The translations under genes and the position numbers were made by a program. The notes under the pieces were generated by a model. It saw only the letters and a list, made by a program, of their open reading frames with translations. It was not told the origin of the DNA and did not search any database. Below, in pieces: positions 14,210-41,003 of a DNA stretch of 64,000 nt; positions within the stretch are counted from its first letter, which is position 1, and the number at the start of each line of letters is the position of its first letter. The stretch is taken from positions 171,834 to 235,833 of the IMG/VR virus record IMGVR_UViG_3300024259_000010; one strand, written 5' to 3'.

Positions 14210-14217
14210 TATATTAC
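14210..14217 (+). promoter_or_regulatory. phiKZ-type early promoter TATATTAC
   Basis: Exact TATATTAC followed by the conserved leader AACTAATTTAAATAAA and an RBS. Confidence 0.75.
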
Positions 14218-21483: not shown

Positions 21484-21728
21484 ATTCGCATCCTTTTGTT
21501 AAAAAATTATTTACATCATAGAATGATGTTAAAGTAAAGATTAAATATATGCAATAAGTAAATGATCGAAATGAATCATTAGATATTCAAACATATATTA
21601 TATTTTTGTAAGGATCTGATAAACTCTAGAATTATATAAATTGATCTCGGGTACCAATCTATATAAATGTGATTAGCAAGATTCTATTTGTTGCAACAAA
21701 TAAAAGTTAAAGAAGGAGAATAAGTAAT

Positions 21729-23315
21729 ATGACAATGAACATTGACGTTGATAAAGGTGACGAATCGTTCGCACCTGACGCAGAACAGAATCAAACTGGA
21801 GCTGGTACACAACAGGCTGCTCCGAAACAAACTCAAGGATTTGACGGTGCCCCAAGCATCTCTGATATGCTTGCTAAAATTGGTCGCCCATCAGAACTAG
21901 GTACTGAAGGCGTTAAGTACATTGAAACTCTGGCTGACATGCTGAAGAAGAACTTCGGTGAAGGTGTTGCTGTAGCTCATGTACCAAGCCGTATCTTGGA
22001 AGTATATCGTGTATCTACTAAGGATCATACGATCCTCCTTACATTCAGCGAAAGCTACAATGTACCTGTGGACACACTATGCCCTCCAACTGAACAGATC
22101 ATCGAAGCTGCTCAATACATCCGTGATTCCATTGGTGGAGTAATTCTTAATAACATCGTTGTGACCCCTGCGGATTACAAAGAAGTTGGTAAGATGTTCA
22201 CCCATATCACATCTGTATTGAAACTCTCTGGTGGTGAGCTTGGTCAGATTAACATTAACAGCTTCTCCAAAGGCCGTTTCTCAATCAGTACTAACATCAA
22301 TGATGTTCGTGAGAATATCAAGAAGTTCAATCCTAAGGCTCTCATGCCTCGTACGGATATTGGACTTGTGTTGTATCTGACTGAAGAAGTCGGTGCACCT
22401 CAGGGTTACGGTGGACAACCAGTTAAGCGTTCTACGCCTATCTTGGTAATCGGTGGTTATACATCGTTTGTCTCTACTGCTGGTACATCCAACTCATATG
22501 CTATTGGAAACAATGCACCTGGGTACTTGGCTGTTGTGAAAATGACTTCCATTGCTTCTCCTCTGATGAGCACTGAAATGATTTCACTGGCGATCCCATT
22601 AGCTACGGAAGAATTCATCCGTCGCAACGGATGGCTCAAACCTTATACTAAGTTCGGAAAGAAAGATCCGAATCTTGGTTCACTCATCCCTGATGAAAAG
22701 GGCAAGCCGTTTTTCATTGACAATATGACTACCCTGATGGACTTCGCTACGAAGAACATCGCGAAGCCATATCTTGCCATTGATGTAACTGACGGTTATG
22801 CACGAATCCCTGGGATTGAAGGATTGCGCTACGGAACAGATGCAGTACAGAAAGGTATTGCTAACTTCCTTGGAGTACCTGAAAGCCAGACTTCTGGTGA
22901 ACTCGTATACCAACGCTTCTGCGAATACATTGGTGAAATCACTGAGACTGGAACCGATACACGTGAAGTTGATTACATCAACCTGATCGCTGCTGGTGCT
23001 TCAGATCTCAACATGCTTCTTCGTTATCTGTACATCCCATCTGAGCCGCATAAGCGTGCTGAGTTGATTGCACGGAACTACGATATCAAAGCATTGTACA
23101 CTAATGCTACAATCGTTCTTAACGCTGACTATGTTGATAACCTGTCAACTGCAGTTGCTGCTAAGTTCCGCCCATTGTGGGAACAGAACGTTGTAGAAAA
23201 TAACATTGGAGTTCTTGGTACTGGAAACGGTAACAACTTCTCCTCCGGACCTGCGTTCGGAATTGGACCTGTTAGCGGTGGTTGGAATGGATTCACAATG
23301 AATCCGTTTGGTTAA
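21729..23315 (+). CDS. chmA: Chimallin (phage nuclear shell protein), divergent
   Basis: Q/A/T-rich N-tail. Ordered motifs PRTDIGLV, PGYLAVVKMTSI, STEMISLA, GWLKPY, PNLGSL, PYLAIDV, DTREVDYINLIAA and LNADYVDNL align by eye with 201phi2-1 chimallin (PIRADIV, APWVASVVITDV, TPEMYWFA, AWARPF, DIGAL, PVFQIDL, DRRDLDNLAALNA, YNAKFIEAL). G/N-rich tail ending in an aromatic residue; strong RBS and terminator. Confidence 0.72.
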   Translation: MTMNIDVDKGDESFAPDAEQNQTGAGTQQAAPKQTQGFDGAPSISDMLAKIGRPSELGTEGVKYIETLADMLKKNFGEGVAVAHVPSRILEVYRVSTKDHTILLTFSESYNVPVDTLCPPTEQIIEAAQYIRDSIGGVILNNIVVTPADYKEVGKMFTHITSVLKLSGGELGQININSFSKGRFSISTNINDVRENIKKFNPKALMPRTDIGLVLYLTEEVGAPQGYGGQPVKRSTPILVIGGYTSFVSTAGTSNSYAIGNNAPGYLAVVKMTSIASPLMSTEMISLAIPLATEEFIRRNGWLKPYTKFGKKDPNLGSLIPDEKGKPFFIDNMTTLMDFATKNIAKPYLAIDVTDGYARIPGIEGLRYGTDAVQKGIANFLGVPESQTSGELVYQRFCEYIGEITETGTDTREVDYINLIAAGASDLNMLLRYLYIPSEPHKRAELIARNYDIKALYTNATIVLNADYVDNLSTAVAAKFRPLWEQNVVENNIGVLGTGNGNNFSSGPAFGIGPVSGGWNGFTMNPFG

Positions 23316-24532: not shown

Positions 24533-24540
24533 TATATTAC
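24533..24540 (+). promoter_or_regulatory. Early promoter TATATTAC
   Basis: Exact motif directly after the terminator. Confidence 0.7.
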
Positions 24541-24625: not shown

Positions 24626-25273
24626 ATGATAGTAAGACCACTTACATCAGTCACTTCATTACCAGATACATCTATGCTACTAGGAACAAGTGGTAGAGGT
24701 AATGTAGAAATACTGAATAAGATTAATAGCAGATGGGCTAACTCTGGAGTTATCTTCGGATCTTCTAATGATCCATTCGCTGATAGATTCCACGACTTTA
24801 AACGTGCCTTTGTAAATGTTGCACGAGACACTGCTGATCTTCTTAACAAAACTGCTTCATTCATTATGGATAGAAATGAGATTATACCAATCAGAACGGC
24901 TGATGATCTTATGTTTGTTCCATCTTGTATGCAGATACCAATTCTATCTTACCCACCTGTACGTGAATTATTCGATAATGATCTATTGCATGGTTGGGGT
25001 GTCGATAAGAAGATGTTACCAGAAGAAGATGAATATGGTCGTATGATAAACAATGGTTTCATTGGATCAGATCCTATCACTGGCGTGGTACCTGAAACAT
25101 ATGATTGGCATTGGAAATGTACCGACCCAGACTATTCTATAGATGAGCTAATGGAAATGGCAGAGTCTAGAGAATTCGTAGATACGTTTATATTAGCACA
25201 AACATCAGCCGATGGTGAACTACAAGATCCAACTGGAATGTTAGATGGTTTACTAATTGGACAATTGAGATAA
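24626..25273 (+). CDS. Conserved Chimalliviridae core protein (phiKZ gp62-like)
   Basis: IRTADDLMFVPSCMQIPILSYPPVRELFDNDLLHGWG...EDEYGRMINNG, recalled from the core block between chmA and the SbcD-like gene. Confidence 0.55.
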   Translation: MIVRPLTSVTSLPDTSMLLGTSGRGNVEILNKINSRWANSGVIFGSSNDPFADRFHDFKRAFVNVARDTADLLNKTASFIMDRNEIIPIRTADDLMFVPSCMQIPILSYPPVRELFDNDLLHGWGVDKKMLPEEDEYGRMINNGFIGSDPITGVVPETYDWHWKCTDPDYSIDELMEMAESREFVDTFILAQTSADGELQDPTGMLDGLLIGQLR

Positions 25274-25770: not shown

Positions 25771-26291
25771 TGAATAATGAAGAAATTGAAAATATAAAAG
25801 ACTTGGCTCATGCACTTGAGGCATCTATTGAAAAAAAGAATACATTAACTACTTTAGAATTTAAAGAATTTCATCCTTTGTTCAAAAATGATACTGATCA
25901 TAACACAGATGAATATAAAGCTCTTTGTTCTAAATGGGGATTCAGAATCTCATTGTATCATCCAGTCAATGTTGTAGTTCCTGGATCTAATGAAGTTGTT
26001 AAAACTCTACCAGCAATGTTTAATAAAGTAGAACTTATTAATAACGTTGGAAATGAAGGTGTAGTTATTAATAAGCTAACTCATGCGATGGCTACTAATC
26101 ATCCATTACGTACTGATGTGGAAGAATCTGTTGATCTATTTAAATTGTCTGTAAAGGCATCCCAAGATAGAGATGCATTAAATGAATCTGCCGCAGCATT
26201 CTCAGATCTTGCTAAAGAGTTTGAGATACCTGATCCAGACCAACAAGATGAAGGTACCAAGAAGATGGTTGAGGATCTTGAGTGGGAATAA
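25770..26291 (+). CDS. Conserved hypothetical protein (core block)
   Basis: TAATG coupling; EFHPLF...KW...PVNVV...LP motif arrangement; acidic C-terminus. Confidence 0.55.
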   Translation: MNNEEIENIKDLAHALEASIEKKNTLTTLEFKEFHPLFKNDTDHNTDEYKALCSKWGFRISLYHPVNVVVPGSNEVVKTLPAMFNKVELINNVGNEGVVINKLTHAMATNHPLRTDVEESVDLFKLSVKASQDRDALNESAAAFSDLAKEFEIPDPDQQDEGTKKMVEDLEWE

Positions 26292-27400
26292 ATATAATCT
26301 CAATAAGTGATGTACATATTGGACTAAGTACATTACCACCAACATATATACCGGATAATTTACGAAAGTATTTATACCCGCATTTAAATGATGAATTAGA
26401 TATTCTATTTATTGTTGGTGATTTTTGGGAAACAATTTTAGACTTCAACGGTCTAGCTGGTTATGAAGCTAGTTGTGTCATTAGTGAGATAATCGAATTA
26501 TCCATTAGACATAATTTTATCATAAGAATATTACAAGGAACATATACTCATGATAGGAGACAGAATCAATTCTTCAAAACGAATAAGAAACTATTAGAAA
26601 CAGATTCTGATAGAGTAAAGGTTTTTGAAAAGATTGATATTGAAGTTATAGATAAGTATGGTATCTCAGTATTATACATACCTGATGATTTACCTACCAA
26701 GAATGTAATGGAAAACATTTTAGAAATTAAGAATACTAATAATATTGGAAAGTTTGATTTTATTCTTAATCATGGATACTTTAAGCATATATTACCTTTA
26801 GGCATACCACATGAACCTCCAAATACTTTGGACGCAGATGTTGTATCTGGTATGGTGAAGGCAACTGTACTGAATGGACATGTGCATACATCCTGTGTAT
26901 ATAAAAAGGTAATAAACAATGGTAGTTTTGACCGGCTACGACACAACGAGGAAGAATCCAAAGGTTTCTTTAAGTTGCATTATATCCCGGAATCAGAAAA
27001 ACTAACCTATGAGTTTATTGAAAATAAAGATGCTGTCATATTTAAAACAATTGGCTTAGCAAAATACAACGATGATATAGACACAGCGATCAATGTGGTT
27101 CGTGATAAAGTTGCTACTATATGTGATAATACGGATAGGAAAGTATTTATCCGTTTAGTTTCTGATTCTGACATAATACGTCAAGGTGTTACTAGGTATT
27201 TAGTAACACGTTTTAACAACGTTGTTGTTAGTTCAAAAAAACATACAAAGAAGAAGAACACCTATGAAGATGAAACAATATATGAAGTGGGTGAACTACC
27301 AAAAATAACTGAAGAGAATATATGTGACATGGTAGTAGCATTTACTAAAGATGAAAAAGTACCTTTATCTAAAGAATATGTTGAAAGTAAATTAAGATGA
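26282..27400 (+). CDS. SbcD/Mre11-like metallophosphoesterase nuclease (phiKZ gp65-like)
   Basis: Calcineurin-like motifs SDVHIG, VGDFW, QGTYTHD, NHGYF and NGHVH. Confidence 0.85.
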   Translation: MGINIISISDVHIGLSTLPPTYIPDNLRKYLYPHLNDELDILFIVGDFWETILDFNGLAGYEASCVISEIIELSIRHNFIIRILQGTYTHDRRQNQFFKTNKKLLETDSDRVKVFEKIDIEVIDKYGISVLYIPDDLPTKNVMENILEIKNTNNIGKFDFILNHGYFKHILPLGIPHEPPNTLDADVVSGMVKATVLNGHVHTSCVYKKVINNGSFDRLRHNEEESKGFFKLHYIPESEKLTYEFIENKDAVIFKTIGLAKYNDDIDTAINVVRDKVATICDNTDRKVFIRLVSDSDIIRQGVTRYLVTRFNNVVVSSKKHTKKKNTYEDETIYEVGELPKITEENICDMVVAFTKDEKVPLSKEYVESKLR

Positions 27401-28260
27401 ACGATATAACGTACGAACGAATGCCAACAGAAAACGCTAACAGTGTATATAGTGTAGGCACCGCCGTTGCGATAAATTCATTTGAACAAAGATACAGTGA
27501 GTATAAATATAATGTTATAGCTATTAATGTAGGAACTCTATTGCGTAATCATGCAACAAAAGATACCTCATTACACGATGTTATAACTATGTTTAATACA
27601 GAAATCTCTGTTATGTTAAATGAAGTTACTTCAATAATGAATAGCAATGGTGCATCGCCGAACTCTTATATACTACTATATGGAATTAATTATAACAGAT
27701 GTTTAAATGAAATACTAGTGAGACCCGAGACTCCAAGTAGGAAACTTATAAACGATGCTACTAATTACATCATTGATCGAAGCAAGGAACTATTTGGTCC
27801 TAAAGGTGAAGGCACCTTTAATGGGATTAAAGTTAAATTCGAATCAATGCAAACAGGTGAGCCGTCTATATATAAAAGACTGTATAACCTAATGTCAAAA
27901 CAAGGAATGCTTCTTAAAGTAATAATGATATCACATTATCCTATCGACTACCATGTTGCTAGATATGTTGATAAGTTTGTATTACTGGAAACACATACTG
28001 GTAAATGGAAATTAATTGATGAACTTAGCGAAAAGATATTCGGTAAGAAATTCATGGAACTCCCATTTATACCATCTACACATTTGTGTTTCGGTGACAA
28101 ACCATTAATAAGTATGAACATTACTTCCAAACAAAAAGATGATCTTTTAGGGACATCTCGAAAACAGGGTTGGAAATTAAAGTCGGCTAATTATATTAAA
28201 GATGAGATCAAACGTAAATATAATTTCCCATCGACTTTATTCCGACAGCTCGGAGATTGA
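27397..28260 (+). CDS. Conserved core protein (phiKZ gp66-like, putative nuclease fold)
   Basis: SVGT..A, INVGTLLRN, SHYPID, LLETHTG and LPF....LCFGD motifs; follows the SbcD-like gene with an ATGA overlap. Confidence 0.6.
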   Translation: MNDITYERMPTENANSVYSVGTAVAINSFEQRYSEYKYNVIAINVGTLLRNHATKDTSLHDVITMFNTEISVMLNEVTSIMNSNGASPNSYILLYGINYNRCLNEILVRPETPSRKLINDATNYIIDRSKELFGPKGEGTFNGIKVKFESMQTGEPSIYKRLYNLMSKQGMLLKVIMISHYPIDYHVARYVDKFVLLETHTGKWKLIDELSEKIFGKKFMELPFIPSTHLCFGDKPLISMNITSKQKDDLLGTSRKQGWKLKSANYIKDEIKRKYNFPSTLFRQLGD

Positions 28261-28623: not shown

Positions 28624-29187
28624 ATGAGTGAAATGCTACAACAACTACAAAAAGAACTGAACATTCCTAGCTTTAGTTTTAAAGCAAAAGAAACTGGTGA
28701 ACAACTTGCAATGTCTGTATTTAACGGACGTGTACGTTTCTCAGTGTTCCCACCTAAAGGATCAAATGCCCGTGGTCTTATCTTCAATCAAGCTCTACAG
28801 CCTTCTGGGTTGATCTTGCTTAAAGAGATGTTAGCTGGTTATGATACCATGACTCCTGATTCCCGAAAGAACATCATGTTCATGGATTGGGATCAAGATG
28901 CAAAACAAGCTAAACCAAAAGCTTCACTTATCTTCGGACAAGATGAAAAGCAGAACTTTTACTTTGAGCTGCAGTTTAAGCACAATGATAATAATAAGGT
29001 TATTCGATTTGGCATCATGGCTGGTGTTATCGCACAACCTTCTTCTGAGTTCTCGTTTGCTGATAAATCAAAACTACAAGTTCGCACAATGATTGATTGG
29101 ATTGAGACAATTGTCCCAGTTGCAATCTGCCTAACAGGTAGTAAGTTCAAACCTGGTGGCGGTGGCAATAACGGCCAACGATACTAA
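28624..29187 (+). CDS. chmC: Candidate ChmC (nucleus-associated RNA-binding protein; phiKZ gp67-like)
   Basis: Immediately upstream of the gp68-like subunit as in characterised chimalliviruses. Alternating beta/alpha pattern (SVFNGRVRFSV, LIFGQDEKQNFYF) and flexible GGGGNNGQRY tail. Confidence 0.55.
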   Translation: MSEMLQQLQKELNIPSFSFKAKETGEQLAMSVFNGRVRFSVFPPKGSNARGLIFNQALQPSGLILLKEMLAGYDTMTPDSRKNIMFMDWDQDAKQAKPKASLIFGQDEKQNFYFELQFKHNDNNKVIRFGIMAGVIAQPSSEFSFADKSKLQVRTMIDWIETIVPVAICLTGSKFKPGGGGNNGQRY

Positions 29188-29204: not shown

Positions 29205-29240
29205 AGATACTAGAGTGGTCACCCACTCTAGTATCTTTTT
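29205..29240 (+). terminator. Intrinsic terminator
   Basis: AGATACTAGAGTGG-TCAC-CCACTCTAGTATCT plus T-tract. Confidence 0.88.
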
Positions 29241-29339: not shown

Positions 29340-29347
29340 TATATTAC
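29340..29347 (+). promoter_or_regulatory. Early promoter TATATTAC
   Basis: Exact motif 43 nt upstream of the gp68-like gene. Confidence 0.7.
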
Positions 29348-29389: not shown

Positions 29390-30961
29390 ATGCAATATAT
29401 TCACCAAGTGCGTCCAGATGGTAAAATAGATATGGCATTAGATTTAGGAAACATTAAGATACCTGAATTAGATGGAAAAGAATATCTATTACGATTTGTC
29501 ATTAAGACGTACACTAAAGTATGTAAAAACATTTCAAGTGGAACAGAAGAAAGTTCTTTCAATGCTATTAACAACTTCTTTGATTATATAATTGAAGATG
29601 ACAAAAAGATCATAGCTATTTATTTAGCAACAATGAATCATGTTATTCAAGAACATATGAAGAACGATTCTGCTGATAATATCATGGATCTATCCAAAGA
29701 ACTTGGGCAGATGGTATTGTCATTAAATAATATTATCTCACTGTATGATAAGTTAGTAGAGTTTGCATCTAAGAACGTCCCTATTAATTTGTTTAAAGAA
29801 GCTGGTGCTCGTCCGCAAGATACACCTCTTCATACTTATTATAAGGAAGACATTATTGAACTACTGGCATGTGTATTCATTTCAAAATTACTAGCTCCTA
29901 TATTTGGAACTATAATGAATTATGCTACTAAGTCTGGTATTGAATCACGTATCAAAGAATTACATTGTTTACCTATCGTATCACCACTATATGCAGAAGC
30001 ATGTCCACATGTTATTTATAAGCTGAAGAAATACATTGAACCTATTCTCAATAAAGAGTTTAAGGAAAATATGGATTCGATCAGTATTGGGTTTACTAAG
30101 AACTCAATTGAGAATCATGTGTTTGTGAACCTTATTGTACGGAACTTTATTAATCTCGATATTTATAGAGAGAATAGTAATCATATTACTGCTATCCGAG
30201 TTGGTATTAAGAAATCAATTGATACTCAACGTAGTAACATGAAGACTAATAAGATCATGTTCCGTGAAGACATATCAGCATTGCCTGATGATCAGAAAAG
30301 ATCTCAATTGGAGATCGATAGTGTTATCAGTAAAACAACAGCTGATGTACCTATTATCACTTCTGTATTCATCAACAAGACTGTAAATAGATTCTTAAAG
30401 GAGTATGATATTGAACATGGGATGTACGATGAATGTCTTAGACATAATTATGAATCTGGTGTTACGTATAATATCTTAAACTCTTTGATATTGGAAATCT
30501 TATTTAGCGGTGCATTGAGTGGTACTAAATCATTTAAGTATTTAACCATTCAAGATATAGCAAAATTGGTTACATGTTCACAGTTAATTTGTGCCTCTTT
30601 GAATTATTACGAACTCGCTAGCAGTATGACTGCATTGAGTTCATCTATGATTAAAGAACAAATGACTGATATGGATCAACAGATATTAGTTGGGTATCAA
30701 ACAAAACAACAATATCGTGCATACATTACTAAACTATTGGATTCATCATTAGGACCAGATATGCTAGTTAGCTTCTTTACCATAAGAGCTAAAAGTATCA
30801 TTACGTCAATTACGACGGATACTCATATCTTTAATAATAGTGAACTACTATGGCAACAACAGAAACATGACAATGTTAATGGTACAATAATTCAATTCAC
30901 AGATGGTTATATTCAAGAACTATGTGGATTATTAAACTTATTGTCAATTGAAGAATATTAA
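29390..30961 (+). CDS. Non-virion RNA polymerase promoter-specificity subunit (phiKZ gp68-like)
   Basis: 523 aa, similar in size to gp68. Sits between the ChmC and PicA candidates; ...YYKEDIIELLAC...KLLAPIFG and QRSQLEIDS segments. Confidence 0.6.
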   Translation: MQYIHQVRPDGKIDMALDLGNIKIPELDGKEYLLRFVIKTYTKVCKNISSGTEESSFNAINNFFDYIIEDDKKIIAIYLATMNHVIQEHMKNDSADNIMDLSKELGQMVLSLNNIISLYDKLVEFASKNVPINLFKEAGARPQDTPLHTYYKEDIIELLACVFISKLLAPIFGTIMNYATKSGIESRIKELHCLPIVSPLYAEACPHVIYKLKKYIEPILNKEFKENMDSISIGFTKNSIENHVFVNLIVRNFINLDIYRENSNHITAIRVGIKKSIDTQRSNMKTNKIMFREDISALPDDQKRSQLEIDSVISKTTADVPIITSVFINKTVNRFLKEYDIEHGMYDECLRHNYESGVTYNILNSLILEILFSGALSGTKSFKYLTIQDIAKLVTCSQLICASLNYYELASSMTALSSSMIKEQMTDMDQQILVGYQTKQQYRAYITKLLDSSLGPDMLVSFFTIRAKSIITSITTDTHIFNNSELLWQQQKHDNVNGTIIQFTDGYIQELCGLLNLLSIEEY

Positions 30962-31014: not shown

Positions 31015-32301
31015 ATGATAATCGATATTATCGAAATGCCTTTCTTGGGTAAATCTTTACCTGAGTATGGTTCATTCATTCCTGTATCAATTCCACATCC
31101 GCAGAACTTAGATGATATTTATATGATCGGGTTCAAAACACATGCTAATATACACAAACATTATAAACGTTATAAAATTATTGAATCGTTAGGTGGTATG
31201 ATTCTAGAACATATTGTACTCGCTGCTCAAGAGCTAGATTTATTATCTGGTAAAAAGAGAAGTTATGGTTCAACTAGAATTAATTACACTAACGTATATG
31301 TAATAACAACACGTCAGCATATAGGTAACAAAATAACCACACATAGATATTTCAAACCATTGGAACATTTATTAATGGCACTTGGGTCGAATGCATCTGG
31401 GATTAAAACAATCCATCAGGTAGCTATATCGGCTTTACTTAATATGTCTGAACGTGTATACAAACTAGATGAACTAACTCATATTTTAAATGATTTTGTT
31501 TTTGAGAACGAAGGAGTCTTAACCCATTTAACAACACCGTCTGTAAATGATGTAGTTGATATAATGGCAAATATTCATAACATCTTTAATGATGTATTCC
31601 ATTACTCATGTAATACAAGTCTGACAGCTGAAAGTTTGTCAGAAGTCCATGAATATTTAAGAAACTCTTTAGACATACCACAGCGTCCTCCAGTAGGATC
31701 TATATGTGATTTGATCTTCAGAAGCAGATATTACAATATGGTAGAAGATGATCTAGTACCGTTTGTAGATAAGCATAACTTTGGAATGTACAGTAGTAAT
31801 GTACCTAGGACACCGCCGGTGTTAATTGAAGATGTCGATTTAATAAATCCTCATATTGATTCTAAGAACAACGATAGAATCGATGTACAATCTTTAATCG
31901 AAACACTGACTTCACTTGAACTGTGTGACTACACAGATCTATCAATTAATCTTGATTATAATGACACACCGCATCCAGATGTGAATATTCACTACACTGG
32001 TTCAGTGTTTAACCATTATTCAATCAACTCATGTAAGCAAAGCTACTTAGGGCTTGATATTGATATTGTACAATTGTATAAGGTTTTAATTAATCTATAT
32101 GGTATTGAAAAATTCCATATGCATAAACCAGACATCTCAGTCTGTAAAACTTTTTACGAAGATGTATATATTAAGTTTACTTCACACACTGCTAAAGATT
32201 TCATATGTTACTTTGATATGACTATCATGTCGGTTCTCTCTCCGATATTGATTGATGATGTATCAGAGGATTACATACGAAAGCAGTTTTTGAATTATTA
32301 A
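31015..32301 (+). CDS. Orphan hypothetical protein (428 aa)
   Basis: AAAGGAA RBS; no recognisable motif. Confidence 0.7.
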   Translation: MIIDIIEMPFLGKSLPEYGSFIPVSIPHPQNLDDIYMIGFKTHANIHKHYKRYKIIESLGGMILEHIVLAAQELDLLSGKKRSYGSTRINYTNVYVITTRQHIGNKITTHRYFKPLEHLLMALGSNASGIKTIHQVAISALLNMSERVYKLDELTHILNDFVFENEGVLTHLTTPSVNDVVDIMANIHNIFNDVFHYSCNTSLTAESLSEVHEYLRNSLDIPQRPPVGSICDLIFRSRYYNMVEDDLVPFVDKHNFGMYSSNVPRTPPVLIEDVDLINPHIDSKNNDRIDVQSLIETLTSLELCDYTDLSINLDYNDTPHPDVNIHYTGSVFNHYSINSCKQSYLGLDIDIVQLYKVLINLYGIEKFHMHKPDISVCKTFYEDVYIKFTSHTAKDFICYFDMTIMSVLSPILIDDVSEDYIRKQFLNY

Positions 32302-32320
32302 ATCATAGTTAATATAAGTA

Positions 32321-32328
32321 TATATTAC
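32321..32328 (+). promoter_or_regulatory. Early promoter TATATTAC
   Basis: Exact motif upstream of the PicA candidate. Confidence 0.7.
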
Positions 32329-32397
32329 ATTAATGTGAGCAAGTTGAAAAACCTCTACTCGCATTAATTTAAATTTATAAAAGAAAGGGATTATAAA

Positions 32398-33921
32398 ATG
32401 CTTGATATGAATGGCTGTAATATGTTCAATGACGCGATTGGACCTAAAATTAAATTATTCATTTTTACACCAAGGCACCACAATGTATCTGTTATTAGAC
32501 CATATGTGTTTAACTTCACAGAAGATATGGCTGATACATTCCTACAAGGGAATGGTACAACTGATGCAATGATGCGAATGAATGGATTCAATAACAATAG
32601 CTTATGTGATGCAATTATGCCATCTACAAATGGTATTGTATTGAACACAAACGTATTAGATCAATATTATTCATTTGTTTTGATTATTGATGGGGCGGAG
32701 CCAGTAAGATCTATGATCTCATTTGGTGCTCCAAAACGTAGAACTGTTCTTACAGGTTACTTCTACGATGAACCTATCCTACAACATACATTACATTCAT
32801 CTACACCTATTGTGAATCCACAAGCAGTGATGGTGTTTACACATAATACATCAGTGATGTTAAATGCTGGAAACCAAGTTAATGGTAACAGTATCCAGAA
32901 CATTTCATTAACTGCTATGCATGATATCATTCCACAATCTACTGACGCATTAGTAGACCAAGCTCAAGTTGGACAAGGTGGATTGGCATTATGTGACATT
33001 GGTTCTATTACAAATGCATATAAACCAGATACATATAGTGAAGAATCTATATCAACAGGAATACCTCTCAATCTAGCTGGGTTCAAAGGTCAAGCTCCTA
33101 TGTTGCACAATCGTGTTAAGTCACCTAAGCAACAATTAGTTGATATTGCATCTAGTGTTGATCAGGCTGTAAGTATGGCTGGATCAGATCATAAGATCAT
33201 TGGTGGGTTTAATGGATCATTAGTTGGTAATGATTCTCACACTATATTTATGGATAGTTTGTATTCACATTTCCAAAGACCAGATGTTGCACAGATTCAA
33301 CAAGGTATTAATCCTTCTGAACCTGTACAAATTCAACAGTTGATCAATATGTACCCGAACACTGAAGTCATACCGTGTCAAGTTCCATTTGATGCGCAAT
33401 GTGATGTACGTGATCAACGTAGTATGAATATTCAAACTGTATTCTCGTCAATGGCAACTAAAGTTATTAATTCATCTGCAGAATCATTATTACTAGGAAC
33501 GTTATCATTTAGATATTCGTCTTGGAATAAAGCATCTGCTATGGACAGAGGTGGAGCTTGGCACATCATGGGTGCATCCTTAATTATGGGTGACGACGAT
33601 GTATCAGGAAGTATCTTGGATAACTCTATTCAGAAGTTTACAATGGAACTGGAAGCATCATTATTCCCAATCCTACTTAAAGCAGGTGGGGAATTTGATA
33701 TGCAAGTTAATTTTGATTCTACGGGTAATACCGCAGTTGATTTATACTTCATGGATTTTACATCCGATGATAAGAATCAATATTACATTGAGCACAATAG
33801 TCTAGGTGGTATTACATCCCCAGCTGTTGGTTCAAGTGATAATGCTAATCATAATAAAAATCAGTTTGACGCACTCGCTGCTAACCTGGTGAAAAAAGGT
33901 GTTGTTGAGGCACATATTTAA
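32398..33921 (+). CDS. picA: Candidate PicA/Imp1 nuclear protein-import factor (phiKZ gp69-like)
   Basis: N-terminal IRPY.FNF, FVL.I and VLTGY. C-terminal run SSMATKVI..LLLGTLSFR / IQKFTMELEASLF / MQVNFDSTGNTAVDLYF / ITSPAVG follows the pattern I recall for gp69; synteny gp68-(x)-gp69-gp70. Confidence 0.62.
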   Translation: MLDMNGCNMFNDAIGPKIKLFIFTPRHHNVSVIRPYVFNFTEDMADTFLQGNGTTDAMMRMNGFNNNSLCDAIMPSTNGIVLNTNVLDQYYSFVLIIDGAEPVRSMISFGAPKRRTVLTGYFYDEPILQHTLHSSTPIVNPQAVMVFTHNTSVMLNAGNQVNGNSIQNISLTAMHDIIPQSTDALVDQAQVGQGGLALCDIGSITNAYKPDTYSEESISTGIPLNLAGFKGQAPMLHNRVKSPKQQLVDIASSVDQAVSMAGSDHKIIGGFNGSLVGNDSHTIFMDSLYSHFQRPDVAQIQQGINPSEPVQIQQLINMYPNTEVIPCQVPFDAQCDVRDQRSMNIQTVFSSMATKVINSSAESLLLGTLSFRYSSWNKASAMDRGGAWHIMGASLIMGDDDVSGSILDNSIQKFTMELEASLFPILLKAGGEFDMQVNFDSTGNTAVDLYFMDFTSDDKNQYYIEHNSLGGITSPAVGSSDNANHNKNQFDALAANLVKKGVVEAHI

Positions 33922-33938: not shown

Positions 33939-35216
33939 ATGCCGCAGATAAAGAAAGATGTAACTGAATTCTTTAAGTTACTAATAGAAATAGGTGACTG
34001 TTTTTATGTTGATAAAGAGATGACAATTCGTACTAAATCGGATGATCATCCTGTATTGATTAAGATTAACGATAAACCACTTCCCATGATTGTATTTAAT
34101 GACAACATGATGGTGGGCAAACATACATTCTTCAATCCTTTGGTTGAGGTAATGGGACACAGTGCGGAACGTAATTGGTTTGAAGCATCACGGTCATTGA
34201 TATTTGGAGTCATGGTTAAGAACATGATGAAGAAGATTATCACAATGGCATTAGATGAAGAAGCTGAAGTTGATTACGATAAGTTGGATATGATTCGACC
34301 ATTTATTAAGAAGATCGATAAGAAGTTGATCAAGGAAATAGATAAGATTCAACCAGTACGTATGCTTCGTATTGTACCTTTTGATAATAAGCGAACTGCT
34401 CAAGCTCAGACTGATATCTTCGATAAGAAATATCAAGAGACCTTGTCATCAGTACGTAAAGGATCATGGGTTATCATTACGAGTATGTTCGAAAGCTTCT
34501 TAGGTACAGATGAGCCACATAAGTTATACCATCATAAAGGAACTATTATCGGTATTCAGAAAATGGATGCCTTCCTTAATGTAATGTTGAAATTAACCCA
34601 AGCACTTGATATTTATGCAGAGGTTATTTTGGAGAAAGATCTTCATACAGCTGAATTTGTTCAGCATATGAAACATATTGAAGAGTATCGTGAGAAATGC
34701 AAATATGCAGTAACTGCTACTATCCAATCGGATAAAGAAGCAGTGAAACCTGAACCTGTTAAAGCCCCATGGCAAACAGATCCAACTACGCAGTATGCAC
34801 AACCCACGCCACAATTCAATGCTCCTACAGCTGGTGTACAACAAGCGATTCCATATCCTGGAGGACCACAGCAGGTAATGCCGCAATATGGTGCTCCGGC
34901 TCAACCTATGTATGGACAACAACAACCACCTCAGCAAATGGCAGGACAACCCGTAGTAGGTAGTGTTCCAAATGCTGATCCGATGATGTTTGCAAGAATG
35001 GCTAAGATATTGGAATCAAATCCATATATGGATGCTAATCAACTTGCAAATAACAACGCACCAATGATGATGAATGGTCAGCATAACCCTGGTTTTACAA
35101 TGGGGGCGCAACAACAGATGCCAATGCCAAGCATGATTCATGAGGATACGAGCAGCAGTGCTATTCCAGCTCCAAGAGATGGAGGAGGAGGATTGCCGAC
35201 GCCGCATAATATCTAA
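33939..35216 (+). CDS. Conserved core protein (phiKZ gp70-like) with Q/P/M-rich low-complexity tail
   Basis: FF..LIEI...YVD...I, FFNPLVE; directly downstream of picA; last ~150 aa low-complexity. Confidence 0.55.
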   Translation: MPQIKKDVTEFFKLLIEIGDCFYVDKEMTIRTKSDDHPVLIKINDKPLPMIVFNDNMMVGKHTFFNPLVEVMGHSAERNWFEASRSLIFGVMVKNMMKKIITMALDEEAEVDYDKLDMIRPFIKKIDKKLIKEIDKIQPVRMLRIVPFDNKRTAQAQTDIFDKKYQETLSSVRKGSWVIITSMFESFLGTDEPHKLYHHKGTIIGIQKMDAFLNVMLKLTQALDIYAEVILEKDLHTAEFVQHMKHIEEYREKCKYAVTATIQSDKEAVKPEPVKAPWQTDPTTQYAQPTPQFNAPTAGVQQAIPYPGGPQQVMPQYGAPAQPMYGQQQPPQQMAGQPVVGSVPNADPMMFARMAKILESNPYMDANQLANNNAPMMMNGQHNPGFTMGAQQQMPMPSMIHEDTSSSAIPAPRDGGGGLPTPHNI

Positions 35217-36965: not shown

Positions 36966-36973
36966 TATATTAC
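36966..36973 (+). promoter_or_regulatory. Early promoter TATATTAC
   Basis: Exact motif upstream of the nvRNAP beta gene. Confidence 0.7.
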
Positions 36974-37022: not shown

Positions 37023-39104
37023 ATGGATGATAATGTAATAGCAGATCCACGATCTATTGCTGATACAAATATTAAACCAGAGGTGATTGGTCTTGAGAAT
37101 CTTCTTAGTCCACTCTGTCAGTTCAACTCATCACAACGTGCAGATATGTTTAGTTCAAATATTTCACAAGCGTTAGTGGTAGATGGATGCGAACCACCAA
37201 GATTAGGATCTGGATTCGAACAGATGATTGGAGATTATTACTTCGATCCAACGCGTCGTAAATCAGAAGCTCAGTTAATTGATGTGATACCAAAATTCGA
37301 AATAGGATTTAGTAGTTCTCATATTTCAGAGTGTCCTAGTAAGACTGTAATACTTTTAACACCAGAAGGTATTGATTGTATTGAGATTAAGAATCATGAA
37401 CAATTATATTCAGGGTTTGGTTACAAGAACAAAATATCACCAGATGCAATTTATCTTAATACGGATGAAGGATCTTTTATTCCTAAAGATATGAAATTTG
37501 CAGAACCACCTAATCACATTGAAGGCGTACATTGTTTAGGCGTTAATGCTCAAGTAGCATATATGGCTATCCCACATGTTGTTCAGGATGCAATTGTTAT
37601 TGGTGAAAGTTATGCTAAAAAGAATGGTCACTTAGGTGTCCATACTGTTAAAGTCTCATTAGATGAAAATGATATTCCAATCAATCTCTATGGAACTGAA
37701 ATAGATCCTAAGATATTTCCAGACATTGGCCAGCAGGTTAATGAAGAAGGTATCTTAATGGCTATCCGAGAAAGCTCGGCATCGTCATTTGCAGATCTTA
37801 CAGAAGCAGCACTTAACCATGTTCAGTTTACAACTGATAAGATTATTAAAGCACCAGCAGGTGCCACTGTTATGGATGTCAAAGTATTCAGCTCAGCTAT
37901 TGCATATAGAAAGCTTGCTGATAATCCTGGTATGATGTCTCAGGTTATTAAATACCAATCACATTATTACAATTACTATAAGCGTATTATCGATTGTTAT
38001 AACAAGATTAAAAATGATGGGCATAAATTAACTCCACGTTTCAATGATCTAGTAACACGAGCAATGTGTTTGAAGAAACCAGCAAACTCAAAAGAGAAAC
38101 TACCACTGATTGATAAACGTGTACCTGTAGGACATTTCGTATTAGAAATTACTTATGGTTATACACGCAATGTATCAAATGGTTTTAAATTTGCTGGACG
38201 TTCTGGTAACAAAGGTGTTATCTCAATTATCTGGCCTGATGAACATATGCCAGTTGATGAACAAGGTATTAGAGCTGATATGATTGTCTCTCCTGAGTCA
38301 GTTGTAAACAGATTGAATCCATCACAGTTATATGAACAGTTCTATAATAGAATGGGTGACTTAATGGCACAGCGAGTTCGTAATGATGAATTCGGTTCCA
38401 TGACAAATACATACAATACTGTCATAAGTTTTCTTAAGGATATTCGTCAAGAGTATGCGAGAGAGATAGATGAGCTATGTGATACTCCAGCAAAGAAGCA
38501 GGCATTAATCGATGATATCAAAGAAGATGGTTTTTATCTGATTATACCCCCATTCTGTAAGGATGTTACATTGTTAAATTGTAAGAATCTAGCGGCTAAG
38601 TACAACTATGTTGAATCACCTGTAACTTACTCGTATCGACAACAAGACGGTACATTGAAAACTGTTACAACTAAGTTTGATCATTGCATTGGATCTATCT
38701 ATATGTACATACTTGGTAAGATACCACAGATGCAGGCTTCTGCATTAGAGATATCGTACATTAATCAATTCGGGTTACCGATTAAAGCAAAGTCAAAGGA
38801 ACTGAAACTACAACATCTGTATACAGCTACACCATTACGTTTTGGTGAAGATGAAGTCAGTATGTTTATTATGGATCTACCTCCTGAAAACATTGCAAGA
38901 TTCTTGGGTATACGTGCTACATGCACATCAGCCACAGAAAAGATGAATCGTGAATTGTTAACGGTCAAACGACCATCTGCTATTAAGCACATTAAGATGT
39001 CTACTAGAGAGATCGTGAAGAATAGTGTTGTGAGTAAGATCTTTAATCATTACATGGGTGTTATAGGATTCGATACAAGCGAAACCTCATCTGGTCGTAA
39101 ATAA
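37023..39104 (+). CDS. Non-virion RNA polymerase beta subunit, C-terminal part (phiKZ gp71-73-like)
   Basis: NSSQRADMFSSNISQA, GVNAQVAYM...QDAIVI, GFKFAGRSGNKGVIS, RADMIVSPESVVNRLNPSQLYEQ, G.IYMY.L.K and PLRFGEDE. Confidence 0.88.
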   Translation: MDDNVIADPRSIADTNIKPEVIGLENLLSPLCQFNSSQRADMFSSNISQALVVDGCEPPRLGSGFEQMIGDYYFDPTRRKSEAQLIDVIPKFEIGFSSSHISECPSKTVILLTPEGIDCIEIKNHEQLYSGFGYKNKISPDAIYLNTDEGSFIPKDMKFAEPPNHIEGVHCLGVNAQVAYMAIPHVVQDAIVIGESYAKKNGHLGVHTVKVSLDENDIPINLYGTEIDPKIFPDIGQQVNEEGILMAIRESSASSFADLTEAALNHVQFTTDKIIKAPAGATVMDVKVFSSAIAYRKLADNPGMMSQVIKYQSHYYNYYKRIIDCYNKIKNDGHKLTPRFNDLVTRAMCLKKPANSKEKLPLIDKRVPVGHFVLEITYGYTRNVSNGFKFAGRSGNKGVISIIWPDEHMPVDEQGIRADMIVSPESVVNRLNPSQLYEQFYNRMGDLMAQRVRNDEFGSMTNTYNTVISFLKDIRQEYAREIDELCDTPAKKQALIDDIKEDGFYLIIPPFCKDVTLLNCKNLAAKYNYVESPVTYSYRQQDGTLKTVTTKFDHCIGSIYMYILGKIPQMQASALEISYINQFGLPIKAKSKELKLQHLYTATPLRFGEDEVSMFIMDLPPENIARFLGIRATCTSATEKMNRELLTVKRPSAIKHIKMSTREIVKNSVVSKIFNHYMGVIGFDTSETSSGRK

Positions 39105-39122: not shown

Positions 39123-41003
39123 ATGAATAGACAAATAATAACAACTGCTATGTTATCCAATATGGAATACTTAGTGGAAAATGTTAGCAAGCCTAATGTT
39201 ATGATTGACCTACAGTTGGATGATGGTAATAAAATAAAACTATCATCTACTAATGCTATACTACATGGTATTTTATGGATACCTTATTATAGACTAGGTC
39301 GTAATATAACTATTAATGAAATATACCCAATCAAGAACGTGACACCAGAAACGGTCAGTGAAGTACAAACTATTCAATATAGGCATTTGATGGAAGAAGT
39401 CGATATGCCTTACATGGACATTGTGAAGTTATTATGGGATACTGTGATAACCTTATATAAATTCGTTCATGCAAACTTGGGTGAGTACTCCAGATCTATT
39501 AGTTTAATGTCACTAATTCATGTAACTGATAACCCAGCTGTTAAGAAGATTATTGAAACTGACATACCGAGTGAACTTGGTACTAAGGTGGCAGAGATTC
39601 GATTCAATGAGTTATCTAAAGAATTACTTGATGTACTTGAAGACCCTAAAGCAATACCTAATAATCCCATGTTACCATTCATGGATTCAGGTGTGTTTAA
39701 TCGTAATCAGCTACCACAGTTAATGATGGCATATGGAGCACGGTCAGATCTAGATGATCAGATGCAGAAACATGTCATTAATGAATCATCACTGAGTGGA
39801 TTGAAAACAGTCAAAGATTATGCGACAGAAGCATTGAGTGCTAAGAAAACATCATTCTACTTGAAAGATGTTATTAGCAAGACTCAGTACTTTGCTCGTG
39901 TACTTCGATTGAATAATATGCAATTCAGAAAGAAGTATAAAGGTGATTGTGGTAGTACATATGTGGCTCCAATAACAATAGCTACAGGTACTGGTAAGAA
40001 CTTTGTTGATAAAGTGGTGTTCCACCATGGTAAGAAAGTAATCATAACTAAGAATAACTATAAAGAACTAGAGGGACATCGTGTTGAAATGATATCACCT
40101 CTTGGTTGTAAATATCATGATGGTATTTGTGAAAGATGTGCAGGGCGTGCTACAACTAAGCCTTGGGCATTTATGCCAGATATTCATCTAGGTAATTATT
40201 CTAAGTCGAAGCTATGTGCTAAAATATCGCAGAAGGTATTGAGTGCAAAGCATCTTATCAAAACAACTTCAATTGAACCTAAGTTATTTGATTGTGCAAA
40301 ACGATATCTATGTAAGAAATCTGGCAGTACGAATATTATATTCTGTAAAACTGTTAATAGAAGTCTTAAGAATATCGCAGTCGTAGTTCCATATGAAAGT
40401 ATGAAACATATCGGTGATTTGCATTATGGTCAAACTGCTGAGAGCTTTAGTCTGTTGGAACAGATTGCATTTAAGAATACTGCAACTGAACAAATGGATG
40501 AGATTAAGCTTGGTGAACCACAGTTCATGCTGCACTTCTCAGAAGAAATGTTAGAACATATCAAAACTGTATATCCAGATATCGAATTGGTAGATGGTAA
40601 TTATGAGATTCCTATGAAAGGATTTAAAGCAAGTGATCCGTTCATTTCTTATGTCGTAATTAATGATGATATGGTAGCATTCTCTGATCGTGTGAAGAAC
40701 ATGATTAGTAACAACATGGCAAGTTATAATTCAGCATCATCTGCATTGATTGATCTGGCTAATATCATCTATACTAAGACAAACCTAAATATATTCTTTA
40801 TTGAATTAGTAGTTAAGTCTTTGATGAGTAGACCTATCACATGTGATACAGATGTAGACTTCTCGAAATTACGTGAAGGAATCATTGACTCAAGTGTTGC
40901 ATCTAAATTAGCACATGAAGATATTCGTAGATACTTACAACAAGCATCTACTTGTGTCGTTCCAAAAGGTGATAGTCCTATTGACATCTTCTTTGGGTTC
41001 TAA
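39123..41003 (+). CDS. Non-virion RNA polymerase beta' subunit, C-terminal part (phiKZ gp74-like)
   Basis: QLPQLMMAYGARSD, bridge-helix-like ALSAKK...TQYFAR, Zn site DCGS...SPLGC...GICERCAG and trigger-loop-like SQKVLSAKH. Confidence 0.85.
   Translation: MNRQIITTAMLSNMEYLVENVSKPNVMIDLQLDDGNKIKLSSTNAILHGILWIPYYRLGRNITINEIYPIKNVTPETVSEVQTIQYRHLMEEVDMPYMDIVKLLWDTVITLYKFVHANLGEYSRSISLMSLIHVTDNPAVKKIIETDIPSELGTKVAEIRFNELSKELLDVLEDPKAIPNNPMLPFMDSGVFNRNQLPQLMMAYGARSDLDDQMQKHVINESSLSGLKTVKDYATEALSAKKTSFYLKDVISKTQYFARVLRLNNMQFRKKYKGDCGSTYVAPITIATGTGKNFVDKVVFHHGKKVIITKNNYKELEGHRVEMISPLGCKYHDGICERCAGRATTKPWAFMPDIHLGNYSKSKLCAKISQKVLSAKHLIKTTSIEPKLFDCAKRYLCKKSGSTNIIFCKTVNRSLKNIAVVVPYESMKHIGDLHYGQTAESFSLLEQIAFKNTATEQMDEIKLGEPQFMLHFSEEMLEHIKTVYPDIELVDGNYEIPMKGFKASDPFISYVVINDDMVAFSDRVKNMISNNMASYNSASSALIDLANIIYTKTNLNIFFIELVVKSLMSRPITCDTDVDFSKLREGIIDSSVASKLAHEDIRRYLQQASTCVVPKGDSPIDIFFGF

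What the first reader, a model, noticed from the sequence alone, without database searches (positions are those of the whole stretch)
32398..33921. PicA/Imp1-like nuclear import gate with its own early promoter
Seen: a 507-aa ORF directly behind an exact TATATTAC, followed by a gp70-like gene. Its C-terminal motif order resembles phiKZ gp69. Established: PicA licenses selective protein import through the chimallin shell. Inference: a divergent import factor here implies a working import system with possibly different cargo specificity, and supports the chmA call independently.
Basis: partly seen in the sequence, partly recalled or inferred. Interest (0 to 1): 0.65.

Follow-up and report, generated by a model that had tools for sequence, protein, structure and literature searches.

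The report
Divergent PicA/Imp1 phage-nucleus import gene
The 507-residue gene is a very divergent but genuine relative of PicA/Imp1, the protein that controls which proteins enter the "phage nucleus", and it sits in a marine jumbo phage that also encodes a hidden nuclear-shell protein and two other import-factor candidates, which extends a known system to a deep uncultivated lineage rather than revealing a new one.

Summary
ORF 32398..33921 (+, 507 aa) exists. An exact TATATTAC lies 69 nt upstream, and the next gene is gp70-like.

BLAST, Pfam and PHROG models find nothing for the 507-aa protein. Three independent lines identify it as a PicA/Imp1 (phiKZ gp69) ortholog:
- **Profile comparison:** a 147-sequence family profile matches a 12-phage PicA profile at 99.5% probability, E = 5e-23, over 444 collinear columns. 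Control profiles score 0.1-0.3%.
- **Structure:** the AlphaFold model (pLDDT 91.8) hits only about 500-aa proteins of known nucleus-forming phages (E = 2e-23 to 2e-17, TM 0.65-0.71). It matches nothing in the PDB, as published for PicA.
- **Gene order:** gp65, gp66, gp67/Imp6-like, gp68, [428-aa insert], PicA-like, gp70-like, RNAP-beta.

The rival 428-aa ORF matches no reference family. It is a fast-evolving, clade-specific insert.

The window also encodes a ChmA that the curated HMMs miss (21729..23315; Foldseek E = 2e-16 to solved chimallins) and an Imp3-like gene.

The promoter motif is real: 42 of 64 genomic sites fall in the 15% of the genome that is non-coding. Early timing is inferred, not shown.

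This is a new member of a known kind. It belongs to a large metagenomic sister clade of classical PicA; this phage itself was found in seawater metagenomes.

The parts
32398..33921 (+). PicA/Imp1 (phiKZ gp69)-like CDS, 507 aa (P0001)
   Evidence: ORF. hhalign family profile against PicA profile: 99.5%, E = 5e-23, 444 columns. AF2 pLDDT 91.8, pTM 0.92. Foldseek BFVD: E = 2e-23 to 2e-17, TM 0.65-0.71 to about 500-aa proteins of nucleus-forming phages.
32318..32329 (+). phage promoter-like motif GTATATATTACA (core TATATTAC at 32321..32328), 69 nt upstream of the ATG
   Evidence: Genome-wide intergenic enrichment P = 3e-20 and extended consensus. A site at the same position before the PicA unit occurs in relatives L026, L028 and L020.
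32383..32390 (+). Shine-Dalgarno-like GAAAGGGA, ending 7 nt before the ATG
   Evidence: Read directly from the sequence.
33939..35216 (+). gp70-like CDS, 425 aa (P0003): folded N-domain plus a P/Q/A/G/M-rich tail. It starts 17 nt after the PicA-like stop and is probably co-transcribed.
   Evidence: hhalign against gp70 profile 92.3%, E = 6e-7. HMM E = 2e-4. No terminator between the two genes. Tail composition.
31015..32301 (+). 428-aa ORF (P0002) inserted between gp68-like and PicA-like; clade-specific, fast-evolving, function unknown
   Evidence: No match to gp67-70 profiles, Pfam or PHROGs. Homolog in L026 at 32% identity while neighbours are 39-61%. N-terminal-only homolog in L019. No confident fold.
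29390..30961 (+). gp68-like nvRNAP subunit, 523 aa (P0004), preceded by TATATTAC at 29340..29347
   Evidence: phrog_3209 E = 5e-18. hhalign 96.9%, E = 2e-10. HMM E = 2e-18.
28624..29187 (+). gp67 / Imp6 / ChmC-like CDS, 187 aa
   Evidence: hhalign against gp67 profile 90.7%, E = 1e-6. Best genome hit of a gp67 HMM, E = 2e-4. Syntenic position.
29205..29236 (+). intrinsic-terminator-like hairpin (14-bp stem followed by a T run) after the Imp6-like gene
24626..25273 (+). gp59 / Imp3-like CDS, 215 aa, preceded by TATATTAC at 24533..24540
   Evidence: phrog_3254 E = 1.3e-5. phiKZ gp59 is phrog_3254. 61% identical homolog in L026.
21729..23315 (+). divergent chimallin (ChmA), 528 aa, with disordered N- and C-terminal tails
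   Evidence: hhalign 91.1%, E = 1e-6, 250 columns. AF2 pTM 0.76. Foldseek PDB: 9 chimallin chains at E = 2e-16 to 1e-12, TM 0.57-0.62, next hit E = 8e-3.
37023..39104 (+). nvRNAP beta subunit (fused gp71 + gp73), preceded by TATATTAC at 36966..36973; marks the downstream end of the conserved block
   Evidence: BLASTP against phiKZ gp71 3e-29 and gp73 6e-13. tblastn against phages.

Best explanation
ORF 32398..33921 encodes the PicA/Imp1 ortholog of a deeply divergent, uncultivated marine nucleus-forming (chimallivirus-like) jumbo phage.

Shown here: it is homologous over its full length to phiKZ gp69 and has the same otherwise unique fold. It occupies the gp69 slot of the conserved block gp65-gp66-gp67-gp68-gp69-gp70-RNAPbeta. 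It co-occurs with a structurally recognisable ChmA and with Imp3-like and Imp6-like genes. It is preceded by a member of the phage's own promoter class, whose core is identical to the phiKZ early-promoter core.

Inferred from published work on phiKZ, PhiPA3 and Goslar: the gene is transcribed early by the virion RNA polymerase, probably together with the gp70-like gene. The protein docks on the ChmA shell, probably with the Imp6-like protein. It licenses folded phage proteins for import by recognising surface patches.

The region aligned with the phiKZ selectivity cluster consists of a conserved frame (T347, G431/F433, D453) next to a hypervariable, indel-rich loop (residues 454-460). That loop is a plausible lineage-specific cargo-recognition surface.
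For: Profile comparison: 98.2%, E = 4e-14 and 99.5%, E = 5e-23, query 25-500 against PicA 14-499. Controls score 0.1-0.3%.

Two of ten sampled family members hit phrog_3141 (the PicA PHROG) directly, at E = 8e-5 and 7e-4, in the equivalent region.

AF2 pLDDT 91.8. Foldseek BFVD gives 15 full-length hits at probability 1.00, TM 0.65-0.71. The 8 that carry names (MadMel, Eowyn, Yaphecito, RP12, RSF1, an uncultured myovirus, Aeromonas D3, Miami) include phages whose PicA orthologs were found. The next hit has TM 0.14. No PDB match was found, as published for PicA (PMC11087766).

Synteny: and the reference loci. The same block is present in relatives.

ChmA. Imp3-like. Imp6-like.

Promoter. Positional conservation. 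The same motif lies before chmA, gp59 and gp68 in phiKZ. PicA, ChmA and ChmC are early genes in chimalliviruses (PMC12908238).

Conservation mapping.
Against: The protein alone is not detectable. There was no BLASTP or tblastn hit and no Pfam or PHROG hit. phrog_3141 finds nothing in the genome at E <= 10. Single-sequence hhalign gives only 1% probability, rank 2 of 76 ORFs. The assignment therefore rests on the family profile, the predicted structure and synteny.

Identity to classical PicA is only 10-14%.

The Imp1-like / Imp6-like co-fold gave no verdict. No RNA data exist, so timing and expression are untested. No tubulin (PhuZ) was detected, although some nucleus-forming phages lack it. 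Function is inferred entirely from distant relatives.
Confidence: 0.85

Rival explanations
1. It is a PicA-fold homolog that has taken on a different shell-associated role in this lineage, such as a structural shell accessory or an mRNA-export or docking factor. Import would then be handled by other proteins, for example the inserted 428-aa family.
For: Divergence is extreme: 10-14% identity, and a branch of about 3.2 substitutions per site separates it from classical PicA. An extra lineage-specific gene is wedged next to it. Binding to the Imp6-like protein is not supported in silico (no verdict).
Against: Full-length collinear homology and fold are retained. The syntenic slot and the Imp3-like, Imp6-like and ChmA partners are all retained. 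It is a single copy in the genome. Residues framing the phiKZ selectivity site are conserved: D453 at 87%, T347 at 70%.
Confidence: 0.1
2. The neighbouring 428-aa ORF (31015..32301) is the true gp69 ortholog and the 507-aa ORF is something else.
For: It lies directly after gp68, where gp69 lies in all 12 reference phages.
Against: hhalign probability against the PicA profile is 0.2%. It has no Pfam or PHROG hit. The ESM Atlas model has pLDDT 0.29 and no matches. The 507-aa ORF carries the PicA signal. This ORF was tested only as a single sequence. A single sequence also fails for the true PicA homolog, but one gene cannot displace the strong positive evidence for the other.
Confidence: 0.01
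3. It is a virion structural protein. One BFVD homolog, from Ralstonia phage RP12, is labelled 'Major capsid protein'.
For: The single database label (rank 7).
Against: There is no HK97-like or other capsid-fold match in the PDB. All other homologs are unnamed, and they correspond to the gp69 slot, which experiments define as shell-associated PicA/Imp1 (PMC11087766; bioRxiv 10.1101/2024.03.27.586873). The label is most likely an annotation error.
Confidence: 0.02

Closest known systems
PicA / Imp1 (phiKZ gp69; PhiPA3 gp63; 201phi2-1 gp125; phrog_3141)
   Same: Full-length collinear homology at profile level. The same fold, which has no PDB relatives. Similar length (507 aa against 485-557). 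The same genomic block between gp68 and gp70. Co-occurrence with ChmA, gp59/Imp3 and gp67/Imp6. Shared motifs: RP near residue 34, (V/I)LTGY, (N/D)P, and a C-terminal SP.
   Different: Only 10-14% identity. Invisible to phrog_3141 and to BLAST. Separated from all 12 classical PicA proteins by one long, fully supported branch. An extra gene lies between gp68 and PicA. It has its own promoter, whereas in phiKZ and most of the classical phages examined the TATATTAC sites lie before gp68 rather than before PicA. The loop aligned to phiKZ N466/E468 is longer and hypervariable.
Chimalliviridae core gene block (Prichard et al. 2023, as summarised in PMC12908238)
   Same: Order SbcD(gp65)-gp66-gp67-gp68-PicA-gp70-RNAPbeta(gp71/73)-gp74...gp75, with chmA and gp59 about 7-11 kb upstream on the same strand.
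   Different: ChmA is shorter (528 aa against about 600-650) and is missed by PF25677 and phrog_4795. gp71 and gp73 are fused, as in 201phi2-1. One or two clade-specific ORFs of 380-450 aa are inserted before PicA. No tubulin was detected.
Marine phiKZ-like jumbo phages (PGC_B of Weinheimer and Aylward 2022, PMC9123017) and metagenomic chimallin phages (PMC12625630)
   Same: Seawater origin, about 236 kb, multisubunit RNAPs, shell homolog.
   Different: Those surveys required HMM-detectable shell and tubulin. This genome fails the curated ChmA models, so it may lie outside what they catalogued. I did not check this genome against their lists.

Membership tests
PicA/Imp1 (gp69) family | Full-length sequence homology to gp69 orthologs | tested here: met
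   hhalign of the family profile against a 12-phage PicA profile gives 99.5%, E = 5e-23, 444 columns. Controls score 0.1-0.3%.
PicA/Imp1 (gp69) family | The protein itself matches the curated family model phrog_3141 | tested here: not met
   No hit for P0001, and none in the whole genome at E <= 10. Only 2 of 10 sampled relatives reach E = 8e-5 and 7e-4. This reflects the limited reach of the model, not a different fold.
PicA/Imp1 (gp69) family | PicA fold, which has no homolog among solved structures | tested here: met
   Model pLDDT 91.8. BFVD hits at TM 0.65-0.71 are about 500-aa proteins, those with names being from nucleus-forming phages. There is no PDB match by Foldseek. The best VIA score is Z = 5.9, below the noise level.
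PicA/Imp1 (gp69) family | Position in the conserved block between gp68 and gp70 | tested here: met
   compared with the reference loci. There is one inserted ORF between gp68 and PicA.
PicA/Imp1 (gp69) family | Co-occurrence with chimallin | tested here: met
   ORF 21729..23315 matches 9 solved chimallin chains at E = 2e-16 to 1e-12 and the ChmA profile at 91.1%.
PicA/Imp1 (gp69) family | Direct binding to Imp6 (gp67) | tested here: inconclusive
   An Imp6-like gene is present. The co-fold returned 'no answer', which is not evidence either way.
PicA/Imp1 (gp69) family | Forms puncta on the nuclear shell and is required for selective import | not testable with these tools
   This needs infection of a cultured host. 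None is known for this metagenomic phage.
PicA/Imp1 (gp69) family | Early expression | not testable with these tools
   Only the promoter motif is available. No RNA runs hold the sequence.
Chimalliviridae (nucleus-forming phages) | Encodes ChmA plus the two multisubunit RNAP sets and the conserved core blocks | tested here: met
   ChmA. nvRNAP subunits gp68, gp71/73 and gp74. Block order. vRNAP genes were not examined.
Chimalliviridae (nucleus-forming phages) | PhuZ tubulin (common but not universal) | tested here: not met
   PF00091 finds nothing in the genome at E <= 1. The genome is 91% complete, and PhuZ-less nucleus-forming phages are known (Asesino, cited in PMC12908238).

The most novel reading that the evidence does not exclude
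The metagenomic clade of PicA-like proteins (at least 323 clusters at 50% identity with E <= 1e-30, none of the 55 sampled grouping with classical PicA) marks a second, deep lineage of nucleus-forming phages. Its shell and import machinery escape all curated models. In this lineage the fast-evolving 380-450-aa gene or genes wedged between gp68 and PicA are an added, lineage-specific component of the import gate, for example a cargo adaptor analogous to Imp2, Imp4 or Imp5.
Probability: 0.15. Interest if true: 0.6.

Novelty: new member of a known kind. Interest (0 to 1): 0.45.

Why it matters
PicA/Imp1 is the only known selectivity factor of the phage nucleus, and its mechanism is unsolved. A homolog at 10-14% identity that keeps the fold, together with hundreds of intermediate sequences, gives a much deeper alignment for separating the invariant frame (likely shell docking or the translocation core) from hypervariable surfaces (likely cargo recognition).

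The result also shows that curated models (phrog_3141, phrog_4795, PF25677) miss both PicA and ChmA in a marine lineage. Surveys based on them therefore undercount nucleus-forming phages.

The conserved insertion slot next to PicA points to candidate lineage-specific partners.

Tried and rejected
Searches that found nothing for the 507-aa protein:
- tblastn against 50,697 GenBank phages.
- BLASTP against phiKZ gp50-86.
- Pfam, where only a sub-threshold CBM_3 hit appeared and was dismissed, and PHROGs.
- The genome search on the own genome with phrog_3141, phrog_3520, phrog_4795 and PF25677, no match at E <= 10.
- Local hmmsearch with PicA and ChmA HMMs built here, only noise.
- Single-sequence hhalign against the PicA profile: 1% probability, rank 2 of 76 large ORFs. 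The family profile was essential.
- PDB sequence-profile search, Foldseek PDB, VIA wide search with best Z = 5.9, below the stated noise of 7-8, and the ESM Atlas shape search.

Complex prediction of the Imp1-like protein with the Imp6-like protein returned 'no answer' (score 0.00). Per the tool's own instruction this is not evidence for or against binding.

The 428-aa ORF as PicA is rejected. Its Atlas look-up was uninformative.

A second word-indexed search with the ChmA-candidate profile added no sequences. Divergent members came instead from the genome search on related viral records.

A tubulin search was negative.

No RNA run holds the locus.

The length window of the search for homologous proteins (0.55-1.75x) means fragments and fusions were not sought there. 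The exhaustive HMM search has no such limit, and 145 of its 150 listed hits are proteins of about 470-615 aa; the other five are shorter (342-445 aa).
Full report
**Observation**

The window is the last 64 kb of a 235,833-bp IMG/VR viral record estimated 91% complete. It has about 34% G+C and was recovered from seawater metagenomes. Seven runs from seven different studies hold at least 24% of the sampled words, and none is RNA.

ORF 32398..33921 (+) is open for 507 codons. A GAAAGGGA Shine-Dalgarno-like site ends 7 nt before the ATG. An exact TATATTAC lies at 32321..32328, leaving 69 nt to the start.

**Is the motif more than chance?**

Yes.
- The window has 19 copies against 9.0 +/- 3.0 in shuffles.
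- The whole genome has 64 copies. Of these, 42 lie in the 14.7% of sequence outside ORFs (binomial P = 3e-20), 57 are on the + strand, and 24 lie within 120 nt upstream of a same-strand start.
- The intergenic copies share a much longer consensus, roughly TTgTanTtca, five bases, then TATAgatATATATTACtTttATa.
- The copy before the 507-aa ORF fits the flanks with 13.7 bits, rank 34 of 42. Most copies inside genes score -16 to -41. It is a real but below-median member of the class.
- Sigma-70-like sites are not enriched (40 against 49.8 in shuffles).

Other copies lie 42 nt before the gp68-like gene, 49 nt before the RNAP-beta gene and 85 nt before the Imp3-like gene. chmA has a one-mismatch variant 127 nt upstream.

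TATATTAC is the published phiKZ promoter core (table in PMC7058600). In phiKZ it lies before gp54 (chmA), gp59 and gp68.

A copy occupies the same place, after the inserted ORF and before the PicA unit, in related contigs whose proteins are only 25-50% identical: L026, L028 and L020. This positional conservation argues for function.

That the promoter is 'early' is inference. It rests on its location before nvRNAP genes and on the published early expression of ChmA, PicA and ChmC (PMC12908238).

**What the 507-aa protein is**

Direct methods fail:
- No tblastn hit in 50,697 phage records.
- No BLASTP hit to phiKZ.
- No Pfam or PHROG family.
- The PicA PHROG (phrog_3141, identified with phiKZ gp69) finds nothing in the genome at E <= 10.

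The word-indexed search gave 8 unnamed metagenomic homologs at 25-59% identity. Because the family scans had left the protein open, I ran the exhaustive profile search. It found 433 cluster representatives at E <= 1e-3, of which 323 are at E <= 1e-30. Of the 150 listed, 145 are about 470-615 aa; five are shorter.

I built a PicA reference alignment from 12 phages spanning the family: phiKZ, PhiPA3, 201phi2-1, Moabite, SA002, LucasX, PhiEaH1, RSL2, pVa-21, C-ZP2022, Ea35-70 and SPLA10.

Profile-profile comparison gives 98.2%, E = 4e-14 with the 9-sequence profile. With the 147-sequence profile it gives 99.5%, E = 5e-23, 444 collinear columns, query 25-500 against PicA 14-499. The same query against gp67, gp68, gp70 and ChmA profiles gives 0.1-0.3%.

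Two of ten sampled family members reach phrog_3141 on their own, at E = 8e-5 and 7e-4, in the equivalent region.

The single sequence alone gives only 1% probability and ranks second of 76 large ORFs, although with the longest position-consistent alignment. The call therefore depends on the family profile, and I say so plainly.

**Structure**

AlphaFold2 with the 147-sequence alignment gives mean pLDDT 91.8 and pTM 0.92.

Foldseek against BFVD returns 15 full-length matches at probability 1.00, E = 2e-23 to 2e-17, TM 0.65-0.71, followed by a drop to TM 0.14. All 15 are proteins of about 480-570 aa. Eight carry names:
- Erwinia MadMel
- Klebsiella Eowyn
- Klebsiella Miami
- Serratia Yaphecito
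- Ralstonia RSF1
- Ralstonia RP12
- Aeromonas D3
- an uncultured myovirus

MadMel, Yaphecito and RSF1 are phages in which located the gp69 ortholog, at matching lengths. I did not map accessions one to one.

No solved structure resembles the model (best VIA Z = 5.9, below noise; Atlas). This matches the published statement that PicA has no structural homologs (PMC11087766).

**Synteny**

In all 12 reference phages the order is SbcD(gp65), gp66, gp67, gp68, gp69, gp70, small genes, RNAP-beta. The window has:

| Window ORF | Assignment | Evidence |
|---|---|---|
| 26282..27400 | gp65 | BLASTP 3e-40 |
| 27397..28260 | gp66 | BLASTP 2e-5 |
| 28624..29187 | gp67 / Imp6 / ChmC-like | hhalign 90.7%; HMM 2e-4 |
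| 29390..30961 | gp68 | phrog_3209 5e-18; hhalign 96.9% |
| 31015..32301 | 428 aa, no match | |
| 32398..33921 | PicA-like | |
| 33939..35216 | gp70-like | hhalign 92.3% |
| 37023..39104 | gp71 + gp73 | BLASTP 3e-29 and 6e-13 |
| 39123..41003 | gp74 | BLASTP 4e-24 |
| 43779..45272 | gp75 | BLASTP 8e-28 |

The 428-aa ORF is therefore an insertion, not the gp69 ortholog.

It has a full-length homolog in the closest large contig at 32% identity, where its neighbours are 39-61% identical. It has an N-terminal-only homolog next to the PicA-like gene of a distant relative. Two distant relatives carry two extra ORFs in this slot. It has no paralog in the genome, no family and no confident fold.

**Context: is there a nucleus?**

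Curated ChmA models find nothing in this genome or in three related viral genomes. By position, upstream of an Imp3-like gene, I tested ORF 21729..23315 (528 aa).
- Its shallow family gave 18.6% against a ChmA profile.
- After adding three divergent homologs found in the related genomes, this rose to 91.1%, E = 1e-6, over 250 columns.
- The AF2 model has pTM 0.76, a confident core at residues 55-486 and disordered tails at 1-53 and 487-528.
- That model matches all nine solved chimallin chains (Goslar, 201phi2-1, phiPA3 PhuN) at E = 2e-16 to 1e-12, TM 0.57-0.62. The next hit is at E = 8e-3, TM 0.18.

ORF 24626..25273 hits phrog_3254 (E = 1.3e-5), which is the PHROG of phiKZ gp59 / Imp3.

All three 'core' import factors of Kokontis et al. 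(Imp1, Imp3, Imp6; bioRxiv 10.1101/2024.03.27.586873) therefore have candidates here, along with the shell.

No tubulin was found. This is not decisive.

**Mechanism**

Shown: homology, fold, synteny, partner genes and a promoter-class site.

Inferred from phiKZ, PhiPA3 and Goslar experiments (PMC11087766; the Imp preprint; PMC12908238):
- Early transcription by the virion RNAP. The unit probably runs from the site at 32321 through the PicA-like and gp70-like genes. Only 17 nt separate those two genes and there is no terminator between them.
- Docking on the ChmA lattice with the Imp6-like protein.
- Licensing of folded cargo by surface recognition.

In the alignment, the phiKZ selectivity residues map as follows:

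| phiKZ residue | Window residue |
|---|---|
| H365 | I345 |
| T367 | T347 |
| A369 | F349 |
| P446 | E432 |
| N466 | D453 |
| E468 | D458 |

Across 147 sequences, T347 (70%), G431/F433 and D453 (87%) are conserved. Residues 454-460 are hypervariable (entropy 3.3-3.9 bits against a mean of 2.9) and carry indels. This is consistent with a conserved frame plus a lineage-specific recognition loop, but it does not prove it.

The Imp1-like / Imp6-like co-fold gave no verdict.

**Relation to known families and novelty**

A quick maximum-likelihood tree (midpoint root, for drawing only) puts the 12 classical PicA proteins and the 55 sampled metagenomic proteins on either side of one branch. That branch has SH-aLRT 100 and a combined length of about 3.2 substitutions per site. 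The window's protein sits in a well-supported subclade with its five closest homologs.

Marine phiKZ-like jumbo phages with shell and tubulin homologs are already described (PMC9123017). So is a metagenomic survey of 406 chimallin phages (PMC12625630).

This is therefore a new, very divergent member of a known family in a known kind of phage, not a new system. What is new in detail:
- Neither PicA nor ChmA of this lineage is reachable with the curated models.
- The sister clade is large.
- There is a conserved insertion slot beside PicA, with an added promoter.

**Verdict**

Confidence is 0.85 that this is the PicA/Imp1 ortholog acting in nuclear import. Interest is 0.45.

Noticed in passing
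window 21729..23315 (+): A 528-aa chimallin that PF25677, phrog_4795 and BLAST all miss. It is recognisable only by an extended family profile (91.1%) and by structure (Foldseek E = 2e-16 to solved chimallins). It has disordered tails at residues 1-53 and 487-528 and is about 100 aa shorter than classical ChmA.
   Followed up: yes
window 31015..32301 (+); L026 8185..9444; L019 7356..9902; L020 7376..9906: A lineage-specific slot between gp68 and PicA holds one or two ORFs of 380-450 aa that evolve faster than their neighbours (32% identity against 39-61%). They have no family and no confident fold. Their function is unexplained.
   Followed up: partly
window 33939..35216 (+), residues 261-425; reference gp70 genes in L002-L013: gp70-family proteins pair a folded N-domain with a low-complexity tail of two types. 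One is Q/P/M/A/G-rich (this window, phiKZ, PhiPA3, 201phi2-1, SA002, Ea35-70, LucasX, C-ZP2022). The other is R/D/E-rich (Moabite, PhiEaH1, RSL2, pVa-21, SPLA10). A disordered tail encoded next to the import gate may deserve attention.
   Followed up: partly
window 24626..25273 (+) and 28624..29187 (+): Imp3 (gp59)-like and Imp6/ChmC (gp67)-like genes are present. Candidates therefore exist for the whole proposed core import set (Imp1, Imp3, Imp6).
   Followed up: yes
whole genome G000; window sites at 14210, 24533, 29340, 32321, 36966, 41078, 42126, 42246, 45336, 58684 and 59111: A phage-specific promoter class with a roughly 40-nt consensus around ATATATTAC, almost all on the + strand. Sites at 58684 and 59111 lie in a gap between minus-strand genes and point at small unannotated + strand ORFs.
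   Followed up: partly
window 21591..21602 (+): chmA carries a variant of the motif, ACATATATTAT (final C changed to T), 127 nt upstream of its start, rather than the exact core.
   Followed up: no
window 29205..29236 (+): A strong terminator-like hairpin (14-bp stem, then a T run) separates the Imp6-like gene from the gp68-like transcription unit.
   Followed up: no
window 4549..8118 (+): A 1189-aa ORF has no Pfam or PHROG match at E <= 0.1.
   Followed up: no
L019/L022 (IMGVR_UViG_3300045988_163688, 361,040 bp): The related viral record carries the PicA-like locus twice, at 71.9-93.4 kb (reversed) and 267.7-289.1 kb, and is classed as having inverted terminal repeats. This looks like a head-to-head assembly duplication rather than a 361-kb genome.
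   Followed up: no
BFVD A0A1L7N194 (Ralstonia phage RP12): A PicA-fold protein is labelled 'Major capsid protein' in the database. This is probably a mis-annotation.
   Followed up: no
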